Virus record (IMG/VR): IMGVR_UViG_3300046787_000286
Span: 62,001-126,000 of that record
Strand: one strand, 5' to 3'
Length of the DNA: 64,000 nt
The translations under genes and the position numbers were made by a program. Positions 223 through 15,194 of this stretch are shown piece after piece (position 1 is the stretch's first letter; each line of letters opens with the position of its first letter). Under the pieces are notes generated by a model. It saw nothing but the letters and a program-made list of their open reading frames with translations. It was not told the origin of the DNA and searched no databases.

Positions 223-296
223 TGCACACTTACAGGACTCGAACCTGACGACCAGGGCAATAGCCCTAGCTATGAATCCAACCATATCAGCGTGGC
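223..296 (-). pseudogene. tRNA-like element with contracted anticodon loop, no CCA
   Basis: T-arm CAGG-TTCGAGT-CCTG, D-arm-like GCTGATATGGTTGGATTCATAGC, hairpin TAGGGC-TATT-GCCCTG. Confidence 0.5.
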
Positions 297-347
297 CTAC
301 GCCTTTATGTGCATGTGTTTAAAGACTTTGTTACTGTCTAAGTATCT

Positions 348-7692: not shown

Positions 7693-7792
7693 CAAGCTCA
7701 TTGTAGGCAGGGCTCGAACCTGCACACAGTCCTTACGGATAATGTCGCCCCTATAACGGGGCAATGTCTACCAATTCCATCACTACGAGCTC
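7690..7792 (-). pseudogene. Leu-type class II tRNA-like RNA with non-canonical anticodon loop and a CTA end
   Basis: D-arm GTGATGGAATTGGTAGACA, T-arm GCAGG-TTCGAGC-CCTGC, GCCCC-GTTATA-GGGGC hairpin, bulged acceptor stem. Confidence 0.6.
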
Positions 7793-8637: not shown

Positions 8638-8713
8638 TGGTCCGGCGTGCAGGAATCGAACCCACATTCATGAGGTAGAAGCTCATTGTACTATCCATTG
8701 TACTAACGCCAGA
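8638..8713 (-). tRNA. trnR: tRNA-Arg(TCT)
   Basis: loop CTTCTAC, CCA. Confidence 0.95.
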
Positions 8714-8715
8714 TA

Positions 8716-8816
8716 TGGTAGGAGCGGTGGGAATTGAACCCACGTTAACTGCCTTATCTAGACAGTGCTTACGGCTGTATAAGGGCCGCCCTTAGGCCAA
8801 CATTAGCAACACTCCC
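8716..8816 (-). tRNA. atypical 101-nt class II tRNA with TAT anticodon
   Basis: 7-bp acceptor stem, T-arm GTGGG-TTCAATT-CCCAC, loop CTTATAC, about 28-nt variable arm, A73, CCA. Confidence 0.7.
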
Positions 8817-8907
8817 ATTGAAAAACACACTTAGACGTAGTAGTTCTTTAGTCCACTAAGATACACGACTACCACTCGTGTCATTAGTTAAATGTGTTTA
8901 TCAATGG
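8815..8907 (-). ncRNA. stem-clamped spacer RNA E (between Glu CCA and the TAT tRNA)
   Basis: CCATTGATAAACACATTT/AAGTGTGTTTTTCAATGG terminal stem. Confidence 0.65.
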
Positions 8908-8979: not shown

Positions 8980-8988
8980 ATTGTTGAA

Positions 8989-9206
8989 TTTGTAAGTAGT
9001 TGAGCCACTTTTATCTCAACTTTTTTCCTGATTATACAAGTCCGGACAGGGGGCGGCATGACACTTGGGATACTAAGTCCAGCGTGGCAACCATACTGCA
9101 CCGATCCTTTCGGATCAGCCGGGAGTCGAACCCGCTTGCCTTTTACTACACAACACCTTCGAAGAATATTGAATAGCGTGACATTCTCTTGCTGACACTT
9201 ACAAAA
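8989..9206 (-). ncRNA. about 215-nt structured RNA with an internal T-arm
   Basis: terminal TTTGTAAGT/ACTTACAAA stem; GGG-TTCGACT-CCC at 9121-9133; GATCC-GAAA-GGATC hairpin. Confidence 0.55.
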
Positions 9207-9374: not shown

Positions 9375-9447
9375 TAGGCCCCGGAGGGAGGAATCGAACC
9401 TCCATTGGTTGTATACGGACCGTGTTACCATTACACTACAACCGGGA
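9375..9447 (-). pseudogene. degenerate tRNA-like element
   Basis: intact D-arm GTGTAATGGTAACAC and T-arm GGAGG-TTCGATT-CCTCC; weak anticodon arm; ends in CCTA. Confidence 0.6.
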
Positions 9448-9686: not shown

Positions 9687-9765
9687 TGGCTCCGTGTGTG
9701 AGATTCGAACTCACCTAGTCACTGATTAACAGTCAGGTCCTTGCACCTAGCTTGGATTTCACGGA
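9687..9765 (-). tRNA. trnN: tRNA-Asn(GTT), second copy
   Basis: loop CTGTTAA, CCA. Confidence 0.9.
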
Positions 9766-12218: not shown

Positions 12219-12307
12219 TGGAGGAAGGATGGTAGAATCGAACTCCAACCGCTTTCGCAGTCCATCTGTTTTCAAGACAGTGCAGGGCCCAGCCCTGATA
12301 ACCTTCC
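12219..12307 (-). tRNA. trnS: tRNA-Ser(TGA)
   Basis: loop CTTGAAA, variable arm, CCA. Confidence 0.9.
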
Positions 12308-13387: not shown

Positions 13388-13421
13388 CGCCTTGCAAGTT
13401 ACTTACGTTGACACAAAAGGT

Positions 13422-13449
13422 AAAAAAGAATGCCCGCCGAAACGGGCAT
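13422..13449 (-). terminator. intrinsic terminator after the tmRNA coding piece
   Basis: ATGCCCG-TTTCGG-CGGGCAT-TCTTTTTT. Confidence 0.85.
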
Positions 13450-13835
13450 GGTTGTTTAGGTTACAAGGTAAGTCCTACCCCGGGTGCATGGGTTATTAAG
13501 CCAATACAGCAGCACGACGAGCGATTTTTACACCGCGAGCGTTGATAGCTACTTCACCTTTTGTATTTGCGTTTGCATTTACGTTTTTTTGCGTCTACGG
13601 CCGAGTTCCCCCAACCCTACGGCTTCTGCTTTGCCGAGCTGTCCACTTGTTTACTTGTTGCCCTGTCGAAACCATGGCAGGCCCATTATAAAACACACTA
13701 TTCCGTTATCCCACGTCTAGAACGATAACTGGGGCTCCGTAGAGCTAATGTGTTTTATGGTGGACCTGGCGGGAGTCGAACCCGCGTCCAGAACACTTTT
13801 CTCTTTGCTTCTTTCCTTACGGTTTTTACAGCAAT
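13450..13835 (-). ncRNA. ssrA: circularly permuted (two-piece) tmRNA
   Basis: acceptor piece ending GCGGGTTCGACTCCCGCCAGGTCCACCA (13758-13835) precedes the coding piece starting GGGCCTGCCATGGTTTCGAC (13684); G3-U70; tag ORF ANANTKGEVAINARGVKIARRAAVLA (13496-13576); promoter TTGACT-17-TATAAT at 13842-13870. Confidence 0.9.
13683..13760 (-). ncRNA. tmRNA intervening segment, equivalent to stem-clamped spacer I
   Basis: CCATAAAACACATTA/TAGTGTGTTTTATAATGG stem. Confidence 0.7.
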
Positions 13836-13872
13836 ACAACAATTATATATGACTTCTTTTAAAAAGTCAATA

Positions 13873-15119: not shown

Positions 15120-15194
15120 TGGTGCGACTGGAGGATTACGATACCTCGACCCAGCGATTATGAGTCGCTTGCTCTTCCTCTGAGCTACAGTCGC
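15120..15194 (-). tRNA. trnI: tRNA-Ile2(CAT), lysidine type
   Basis: AGCGA-CTCATAA-TCGCT arm typical of Ile2; CCA; promoter at 15203-15231. Confidence 0.8.

What the first reader, a model, noticed from the sequence alone, without database searches (positions are those of the whole stretch)
8716..8816. Class II (long variable arm) tRNA body carrying a UAU anticodon
Seen: loop CU-UAU-AC, a variable arm of about 28 nt, a Tyr/Ser-like D-loop (GGCCTAAGG) and A73. Established: bacteria read AUA with lysidine-modified tRNA-Ile2(CAU), which is also present here (15120); Ile tRNAs are class I. Inference: this tRNA may be charged by a class II-arm synthetase (Leu/Ser/Tyr) and misread AUA, bypass TilS dependence, or act as a decoy.
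Basis: partly seen in the sequence, partly recalled or inferred. Interest (0 to 1): 0.6.

Follow-up and report, generated by a model that had tools for sequence, protein, structure and literature searches.

The report
Phage isoleucine tRNA with two anticodon arms
The flagged 101-base stretch is a real tRNA gene from a large, largely unannotated family carried by phages and mobile elements, which has two isoleucine-type anticodon hairpins (a normal UAU one and a near-copy of the GAU one) and can be drawn as two alternative cloverleaves, an architecture I found described nowhere.

Summary
Window 8716-8816 (minus strand) is a genuine tRNA gene inside a 33-gene phage tRNA cluster. It is not a one-off. 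I collected about 200 distinct homologues from viral contigs, a few cultured phages and 69 bacterial genomes.

All four stems covary strongly. A Levitt-type tertiary pair covaries without exception (G-C 24, A-U 38).

Two 7-nt loops are invariant:
- Loop 1 is CUUAUAM, a canonical anticodon loop with anticodon UAU.
- Loop 2 is YAGAUAA, the tRNA-Ile(GAU) anticodon loop with U33 replaced by A.

In the window's subtype, the segment between the two hairpins is a second copy of the D-stem 3' strand. It covaries with positions 10-13. Two near-isoenergetic cloverleaves therefore exist:
- Fold 1: UAU arm as anticodon arm, hairpin 2 as a long variable arm.
- Fold 2: GAU-like arm as anticodon arm, UAU hairpin as a D-loop insertion.

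Best reading (inferred, not shown): an AUA-reading isoleucine tRNA independent of TilS, whose second arm supplies the anticodon identity that ordinary bacterial IleRS fails to see in UAU. Charging by Leu/Ser/Tyr synthetases is not supported.

The parts
8716..8816 (-). Whole tRNA gene, 101 nt, CCA encoded. It lies 3 nt upstream of tRNA-Arg(UCU) (8712-8638) in a minus-strand tRNA cluster.
   Evidence: Rfam tRNA 38.5 bits; own covariance model R1 112 bits
8810..8816 (-). Acceptor stem 5' strand (RNA 1-7). It pairs with 8720-8726.
   Evidence: all 7 pairs show compensatory changes, 99.8% paired in 62 sequences
8805..8807 (-). D-stem 5' strand G10 C11 U12. It has two possible partners: AGG at 8790-8792 and AGC at 8767-8769.
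   Evidence: downstream partner paired in 100% of 87 sequences, with G-C>U-A once and U-A>C-G six times; upstream partner pairs G10 in only 26 of 87
8789..8804 (-). Nearly invariant D-loop block AAUGUUGGCCUAAGGG (A14, G18 G19). G at 8801 forms the Levitt-type pair with C at 8744.
   Evidence: G-C 24, A-U 38, no exception in alignment A2
8772..8788 (-). Hairpin 1: 4 bp plus a C.A mismatch, loop CUUAUAC (8777-8783), anticodon UAU at 8779-8781.
   Evidence: all 5 pairs covary; the 31-39 pair is mismatched in 41 of 62; the loop is invariant in scans that did not require it
8766..8771 (-). Linker UA, second copy of the D-stem 3' strand AGC (8767-8769), and A (8766) in the place of nucleotide 26.
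8749..8765 (-). Hairpin 2: 5 bp, loop UAGAUAA (8754-8760). This is the tRNA-Ile(GAU) anticodon loop with A at position 33.
   Evidence: all 5 pairs covary; loop present in 15/15, 30/30 and 29/29 sequences found by patterns that did not include it; Rfam aligns it as the anticodon arm
8744..8748 (-). Five nucleotides UUAAC between hairpin 2 and the T stem, the length of a class I variable loop.
   Evidence: 5 nt in 104 of 142 switch-type members
8727..8743 (-). T arm (GUGGG / UUCAAUU / CCCAC).
   Evidence: 99.7% paired, 3 pairs with compensatory changes
8716..8726 (-). Acceptor 3' strand (8720-8726), discriminator A73 (8719), CCA (8716-8718).
   Evidence: A73 invariant in A2

Best explanation
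It is a functional isoleucine tRNA of a widespread phage and mobile-element family. The family is built as a normal tRNA with a duplicated module: D-stem 3' strand, nucleotide 26, anticodon arm.

- Hairpin 1 carries a canonical UAU anticodon loop and reads the AUA codon without needing lysidine or TilS.
- Hairpin 2 is a copy of the tRNA-Ile(GAU) anticodon stem-loop with A33.

The D-stem 5' strand can pair with either copy of its partner, so the RNA has two cloverleaves. In fold 2 the host IleRS sees G34 A35 U36 A37 A38, A73 and U12-A23 in the usual places and charges the tRNA with isoleucine. In fold 1 the UAU arm sits in the anticodon position and the other hairpin lies where class II tRNAs carry their long variable arm, which ribosomes tolerate.

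Shown: the gene, the family, the four stems, the tertiary pair, the two invariant loops, the two alternative D-stem pairings, and that AUA behaves as an Ile codon in carrier phages.

Inferred: expression, charging with Ile, the division of labour between the arms, and actual switching between folds.
For: Structure:
- Covariation in all stems.
- Levitt-type pair G-C 24, A-U 38, no exceptions.
- Rfam tRNA model above its gathering score, aligned in fold 2.
- The downstream D helix is 100% paired, with compensatory changes at positions 10, 12 and 13 across subfamilies: GCU/AGC, GCUU/AAGC, GCUC/GAGC, GCC/GGC, GCUG/CAGC.
- The upstream partner is also kept. C11-G24 pairs in 87 of 87 and U12-A23 in 80 of 87. 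It is a perfect match in the Xanthomonad and Rhodanobacter subtypes.
- Nearest-neighbour energies of the two folds lie within 1-3 kcal/mol.

Loops:
- Loop 2 is invariant where it was not used as a search criterion.
- Its closing pair covaries C-G, A-U, G-C.
- tRNA-Ile(GAU) genes in the same phage loci have YUGAUAA.

UAU arm as the decoder:
- About 50 'V-type' members have a perfect canonical D arm, and the UAU arm is unambiguously in the anticodon position. ARAGORN calls one of them tRNA-Ile(tat).
- T1-like phages carry only this gene plus tRNA-Arg(UCU or CCU). They use AUA at about 10 per 1000 codons, and AUA aligns with Ile.
- The window phage uses AUA for 16.8% of Ile codons.

Why a second arm could be needed:
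- E. coli IleRS has a 360-fold lower kcat/Km for UAU than for the lysidine anticodon (PMC3575796).
- The anticodon loop, t6A37 and A73 are the strong Ile determinants (PMC9976931).
- No TilS and no class Ia synthetase in the held 214 kb.
Against: - No expression or charging data. Four freshwater metatranscriptomes had no contig over 8728-8821, although they hold only relatives of this phage.
- Plain 75-78-nt tRNA(UAU) genes are common in viral contigs (108 of 119 sampled hits), so an extra arm is not generally required.
- V-type members lack the second D-strand copy and have only a 3-bp hairpin 2. There the loop would have to act from the variable-arm position, which a class I synthetase is not expected to reach (established knowledge of class I docking).
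- The invariant A33 of loop 2 is unexplained.
- The window phage also has a tRNA-Ile2-like CAU gene, so it is not dependent on this tRNA for AUA.
- All five bacterial carriers tested have TilS.
Confidence: 0.42

Rival explanations
1. Bifunctional isoleucine tRNA. Both arms decode: by alternating between the two cloverleaves, one gene reads AUA (UAU arm) and AUC/AUU (GAU arm).
For: - Both loops are Ile anticodon loops and both are invariant.
- In types A and B, hairpin 2 has exactly the spacing of a class I anticodon arm: 1 nt, 5 bp, 7 nt, 5 bp, 5-nt variable loop.
- The two folds are near-isoenergetic.
Against: - Loop 2 always has A33 instead of the near-universal U33 needed for the U-turn.
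- V-type members have only a 3-bp hairpin 2.
- Many carrier phages also have an ordinary tRNA-Ile(GAU): 36 of 144 loci, the window twice, and Vibrio phage WD615 right next to it.
Confidence: 0.15
2. Only fold 2 matters. It is a tRNA-Ile(GAU-like) whose UAU hairpin is an accessory arm inserted in the D loop, for example a handle for another factor, and not an anticodon.
For: - Rfam's tRNA model aligns it this way.
- In types A and B, G10 pairs only with the downstream partner.
- ARAGORN calls the Stenotrophomonas copy tRNA-Ile(gat) using hairpin 2.
Against: - In V-type members the UAU arm is the only possible anticodon arm.
- Loop 1 has every canonical anticodon-loop feature (C32, U33, A37), while loop 2 lacks U33.
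- The gene pairs with rare-codon tRNA-Arg in small phages rich in AUA.
Confidence: 0.12
3. Not primarily a translation adaptor. It is a decoy or shield against a host factor that acts on tRNA-Ile, such as an anticodon nuclease or a toxin that acetylates Ile-tRNA. Alternatively loop 2 (which contains AUA) masks the UAU anticodon by loop-loop pairing.
For: - Loop 2 AUAA is complementary to loop 1 UUAU (sequence).
- Vibrio phage WD615 carries only two tRNAs, both Ile.
- The Stenotrophomonas copy abuts a defence-type island with an OLD-family nuclease.
Against: - The loop-loop helix would be only 4 A-U pairs, because the G after AUAA is a covarying stem base.
- No Ile-specific anticodon nuclease is known to me.
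- The intact acceptor stem, A73, CCA and tertiary pair argue for a chargeable tRNA.
Confidence: 0.12
4. One reading: a class II tRNA charged by LeuRS, SerRS or TyrRS that inserts the wrong amino acid at AUA.
For: - A long extra arm and A73, which also fits Leu.
- Precedents exist. Nematode nev-tRNA(UAU) is leucylated in vitro (PMC3333845). Bacterial allo-tRNA(UAU) also exists (PMC5389517).
Against: - The extra arm's loop copies the Ile anticodon loop.
- The structure is 7/5, not 8/4.
- There is no G73 for SerRS and no U35 for TyrRS.
- AUA aligns with Ile in carrier phages.
- The D stem and Levitt pair do not follow the tRNA-Leu pattern.
Confidence: 0.05
5. A degenerate tRNA pseudogene or a chance tRNA-like sequence.
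For: ARAGORN does not call it.
Against: About 200 distinct homologues with compensatory changes in every stem and invariant loops.
Confidence: 0.01

Closest known systems
tRNA-Ile(UAU) of Mycoplasma mobile and other bacteria lacking tilS (PMC3575796)
   Same: A bacterial-type tRNA that reads AUA with an unmodified-C-free UAU anticodon, independent of lysidine.
   Different: That tRNA is an ordinary class I tRNA, and the organism's IleRS has changed (Arg865) to accept UAU. Here the tRNA carries a second arm that mimics GAU, and the carriers tested keep TilS.
Bacterial tRNA-Ile2 (CAU modified to lysidine)
   Same: The minor AUA decoder. Phages often carry one, and this window probably does at 15120-15194.
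   Different: The anticodon is CAU and it needs TilS. It is class I with no extra arm.
Class II tRNAs (Leu, Ser, Tyr), nematode nev-tRNA-Ile(UAU), bacterial allo-tRNA(UAU)
   Same: In fold 1 there is a long stem-loop between the anticodon and T arms. nev- and allo-tRNAs combine such an arm with UAU.
   Different: - Those variable loops are short (3-5 nt) and variable.
- Here the loop is 7 nt, invariant and anticodon-like, and is flanked by 6-7 and 5 unpaired nt.
- Allo-tRNAs are 8/4 or 9/3; this is 7/5.
- nev-tRNAs are eukaryotic.
tRNAs that need help to choose between two folds (for example human mitochondrial tRNA-Lys, PMC9976931)
   Same: Two competing secondary structures of one tRNA.
   Different: There one fold is inactive and is suppressed by a modification. 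Here both pairings are kept by selection and each gives a complete cloverleaf.

Membership tests
tRNA (Rfam RF00005) | Score at or above the curated gathering score (29 bits) | tested here: met
   38.5 bits, E 3e-7, full model 1-71, when 8700-8830 is searched alone. In the 16-kb search the hit was hidden by clan competition.
tRNA (Rfam RF00005) | Cloverleaf stems supported by compensatory changes, and an L-shape tertiary pair (15-48) | tested here: met
Class II (long variable arm) tRNA | Stem-loop of more than 10 nt between the anticodon stem and the T stem, with a canonical D arm 5' of the anticodon arm | tested here: inconclusive
   The 28-nt region with a 5-bp hairpin is present. In the window's subtype the canonical D stem has only 2 Watson-Crick pairs plus a G.G mismatch, while an alternative partner downstream pairs perfectly. 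V-type relatives do meet the definition.
Allo-tRNA (Mukai et al., PMC5389517) | 8/4 or 9/3 acceptor/T-stem configuration | tested here: not met
   7-bp acceptor and 5-bp T stem, both covarying
tRNA-Ile2 (lysidine type) | CAU anticodon | tested here: not met
   Loop 1 is CUUAUAC and loop 2 is UAGAUAA
Isoleucine-accepting tRNA (E. coli identity set, PMC9976931) | A73; anticodon loop G34 (or lysidine) A35 U36 A37 A38; U12-A23; C29-G41; C4-G69 | tested here: inconclusive
   - A73 and U12-A23 are present, and loop 2 has G A U A A.
- C29-G41 is present in hairpin 2 of the enterobacterial phage copies and in 24 of 62 type-A sequences, but not in the window (G-C).
- C4-G69 is absent in the window (A-U).
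- Actual charging cannot be tested here.
tmRNA | Rfam gathering score, tag reading frame | tested here: not met
   21-22 bits against a gathering score of 47, only through the acceptor/T part. The real permuted tmRNA is at 13405-13850.

The most novel reading that the evidence does not exclude
A natural tRNA separates the two jobs of the anticodon. One arm, a GAU mimic blinded for decoding by A33, is shown to the synthetase. A second arm (UAU) is shown to the ribosome. The molecule switches between two complete cloverleaves by re-pairing its D-stem strand with one of two duplicated partners. Phages use this to read AUA without the host's lysidine pathway and without a changed IleRS.
Probability: 0.33. 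Interest if true: 0.92.

Novelty: new variant of a known kind. Interest (0 to 1): 0.8.

Why it matters
AUA is the one sense codon whose reading in bacteria depends on an essential modification enzyme (TilS). The UAU anticodon is normally barred because IleRS does not accept it.

A tRNA that carries its own 'identity arm' would be a new solution to that problem. It would also be the first natural case of a tRNA with two anticodon-type arms and two selectable cloverleaves.

Practical consequences:
- These genes are missed or mis-called by standard tRNA finders. ARAGORN gives no call, '???', Ile(gat) or Ile(tat) for different members. Phage tRNA inventories and codon-supply analyses are therefore incomplete.
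- The design could be of use for reassigning AUA in engineered laboratory strains.

Tried and rejected
- **ARAGORN.** It does not call the gene on the window. On relatives it gives inconsistent calls.
- **The 15-mer scan of viral contigs.** About 100 hits were expected by chance. Only 10 new true members came out.
- **Loop-loop kissing.** I considered pairing of 5 bp between the loops. I rejected 5 bp because the G that follows AUAA is a covarying stem base, which leaves 4 A-U pairs.
- **Core gene of Xanthomonadaceae.** Rejected: found in 4 of 141 genomes sampled. Only 28 candidates per genome were scored, so this is 'not found', not 'absent'.
- **Replacement for a lost TilS.** Rejected for the five bacterial carriers tested.
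- **Phage-encoded TilS or IleRS.** None in the held 214 kb. The record is only about 62% complete.
- **Expression.** Four metatranscriptome runs gave no contig over the gene. They hold only related sequence, so this says nothing.
- **Literature.** Seven full-text searches found no description of the family. Subscription journals are not covered.
- **Further pairings.** A mutual-information scan found only the Levitt-type pair and one subfamily-linked pair: the nucleotide after hairpin 1 with nucleotide 47, U-A 68 and C-G 13. I do not trust the latter.
- **MFE folding of the single sequence.** It gives non-conserved pairs in the D region and is not informative.
- **Not used.** No structure prediction of RNA or protein-RNA complexes is available. 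Complex prediction and the big protein searches were not used.

Full report
**1. What is in the window**

On the minus strand, 8816 to 8716 reads as a 101-nt RNA. Its parts in order:
- a 7-bp acceptor stem (G1.U72);
- U8 U9;
- the block GCUAAUGUUGGCCUAAGGG;
- a hairpin with loop CUUAUAC, with a C.A mismatch at the loop end;
- UA-AGC-A;
- a 5-bp hairpin with loop UAGAUAA;
- UUAAC;
- a normal T arm;
- A73 and an encoded CCA.

It sits in a run of 33 tRNA or tmRNA genes on that strand, 3 nt upstream of tRNA-Arg(UCU). ARAGORN does not call it. In a 16-kb Rfam scan only a weak tmRNA hit survived. Searched alone, Rfam's tRNA model gives 38.5 bits against a gathering score of 29.

The window belongs to a 214-kb IMG/VR virus record, about 62% complete, with 42.5% G+C. 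Near-identical DNA occurs in freshwater and lake metagenomes. No cultured phage is close to it.

**2. It is a member of a large family**

- blastn against cultured phages found the same roughly 100-nt element in Xanthomonas jumbo phage Xoo-sp13, Vibrio phage vB_ValC_WD615, and T1-like coliphages and Klebsiella phages.
- That is 10 of 50,697 records. Four are annotated 'tRNA-Ile' and six are unannotated.
- Pattern scans of IMG/VR gave well over 200 contigs.
- A scan of one genome per prokaryotic species gave 69 genomes, mostly Xanthomonadales/Lysobacterales, some Acidobacteria and Verrucomicrobia.
- After parsing I hold 200 distinct sequences.
- In viral loci the element usually lies in tRNA clusters. 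104 of 144 loci have three or more other tRNAs in the flank.
- In Xanthomonadaceae it is accessory, found in 4 of 141 genomes sampled. In a Stenotrophomonas chromosome it borders an island with KfrA-like and OLD-family nuclease genes.

**3. Structure that is shown**

On 62 distinct sequences of the window's subtype (type A, alignment A2):
- 96.7% of cells pair.
- 21 of 25 pairs have compensatory double changes.
- No shuffle of 500 reaches any measure except one.

The same holds on 87 sequences across subtypes. Acceptor stem, hairpin 1, hairpin 2 and T stem are all individually supported.

The purine in AAURUUGG and the base just before the T stem covary perfectly: G-C 24, A-U 38, no exceptions. 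This is the Levitt pair of the tRNA core, so the RNA folds as a tRNA.

Two loops are invariant:
- Loop 1 is CUUAUAM, with C32, U33, UAU, A37.
- Loop 2 is YAGAUAA.

Most of my scans demanded these motifs, so I checked scans that did not. Loop 2 was present in 15 of 15 type A, 30 of 30 type B and 29 of 29 type C sequences. The pair closing loop 2 covaries (C-G, A-U, G-C), so the loop is exactly 7 nt.

Ordinary tRNA-Ile(GAU) genes in the same phage loci have loop YUGAUAA. Loop 2 is that loop with U33 changed to A.

**4. Two cloverleaves**

The three or four bases between the hairpins are a second copy of the D-stem 3' strand.
- They pair with positions 10-12 in 100% of 87 sequences.
- They change together with positions 10-13 between subfamilies: GCU/AGC, GCUU/AAGC, GCUC/GAGC, GCC/GGC, GCUG/CAGC, and UCU/AGA in one type-A member.
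- The usual partner, 5' of hairpin 1, is also kept. C11-G24 is kept in all and U12-A23 in 80 of 87.
- In types A and B, however, G10 faces a purine there. G10 pairs in 26 of 87, mainly the Xanthomonad and Rhodanobacter subtypes, where both partners are perfect.

Hence there are two folds:
- Fold 1: the UAU arm is in the anticodon position and hairpin 2 is a long variable arm.
- Fold 2: hairpin 2 is in the anticodon position. It has exactly one nucleotide before it and a 5-nt variable loop after it, and hairpin 1 is a 32-nt insertion in the D loop. This is Rfam's alignment, with spacing.

Nearest-neighbour energies differ by 1-3 kcal/mol either way.

About 50 shorter members (90-94 nt, 'V-type') have a perfect canonical D arm, no second D-strand copy and a 3-bp hairpin 2. 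There only fold 1 can be drawn.

**5. What it most likely does**

The UAU arm is the decoder, for these reasons:
- It is the only possible anticodon arm in V-type members.
- It has all canonical loop features.
- In small T1-like phages the gene is one of only two tRNAs, the other being tRNA-Arg(UCU) or (CCU). These are the decoders of E. coli's rarest codons.
- Those phages use AUA at 9-10 per 1000 codons, about 15% of Ile.
- Their AUA codons align with Ile in the orthologue. When the codon differs, partners are Ile 50, Leu 18, Val 13. This is like AUU and AUC, and unlike CUA and UUA.

The window phage uses AUA for 16.8% of Ile codons.

Why a second Ile-type loop?
- E. coli IleRS discriminates 360-fold against UAU (PMC3575796).
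- The anticodon loop with t6A37 and A73 are the strong Ile determinants (PMC9976931).
- Loop 2 offers G34 A35 U36 A37 A38. In fold 2 it offers them at the normal place.
- In the enterobacterial phage copies, hairpin 2 also has C29-G41.

I therefore propose that hairpin 2 is the synthetase's handle and hairpin 1 the ribosome's anticodon. This step is inference.

Weak points:
- Plain tRNA(UAU) genes are common in viral contigs.
- V-type members cannot adopt fold 2.
- A33 is unexplained.
- There are no expression data.
- Carriers keep TilS.

**6. Comparison with what is known**

- It meets the tests for 'tRNA'.
- It fails the allo-tRNA test (7/5, not 8/4).
- It is not a lysidine-type tRNA-Ile2.
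- It works like the Mycoplasma mobile tRNA-Ile(UAU), but with the adaptation placed in the tRNA rather than in IleRS.
- nev-tRNA and allo-tRNA are the only described tRNAs that join a long arm to UAU. Their arms are not anticodon mimics.
- Seven full-text searches found no description of this family. Paywalled literature was not searched.

**7. Verdict**

TilS independence is plausible. Leu/Ser/Tyr charging is not supported.
- The object is a new architectural variant of tRNA, widespread in phages, and of high interest.

Noticed in passing
window 7699-7789 (-): ARAGORN 'tRNA-???'. It has a tRNA-Leu-like D loop (GGAAUUGGUAGAC) and a long variable arm. A 5-bp stem closes a 6-nt loop GUUAUA, which again contains UAU. 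The acceptor stem is interrupted by 3 extra bases.
   Followed up: partly
window 224-312 (-): A second ARAGORN 'tRNA-???' with a 2-base 'anticodon' and an imperfect acceptor stem.
   Followed up: no
window 12223-12307 (-): Matches Rfam tRNA-Sec at 45.9 bits (gathering score 47) but has loop CUUGAAA (anticodon UGA, Ser). It looks like the 8/4-type tRNA-Ser reported from phages of alpha-proteobacteria (PMC5389517).
   Followed up: partly
window 13405-13850 (-): A permuted (two-piece type) tmRNA gene in the phage tRNA cluster, 91 bits. This type is known from alpha- and some beta-proteobacteria and cyanobacteria, which hints at the host.
   Followed up: no
window about 8984-9190: The spacer between tRNA-Ala and tRNA-Glu is covered by very deep RNA contigs at 97-98% identity in freshwater metatranscriptomes, with adapter-flanked ends near 9040 and 9188. 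It contains a T-arm-like hairpin. No Rfam family matches and no cultured phage matches. It may be a stable small RNA like the T4 species 1 and 2 RNAs.
   Followed up: partly
window 9379-9445 and 9690-9765 (-): Weak Rfam tRNA matches (32.8 and 26.3 bits) that ARAGORN does not call.
   Followed up: no
   Followed up: partly
L549 (phage PCEc3) and L550 (phage Opt-79): The tRNA-Arg anticodon tracks codon use. The phage with UCU uses AGA at 12.1 and AGG at 8.5 per 1000 codons. The phage with CCU uses AGG at 12.2 and AGA at 5.4 per 1000.
   Followed up: partly
L399 3397-6974 (Stenotrophomonas chromosome): Directly 3' of the two-armed tRNA lies an island with a SEC-C-motif protein, a KfrA-like protein and an OLD-family (AAA plus TOPRIM) nuclease. 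The tRNA may serve as an integration site.
   Followed up: partly
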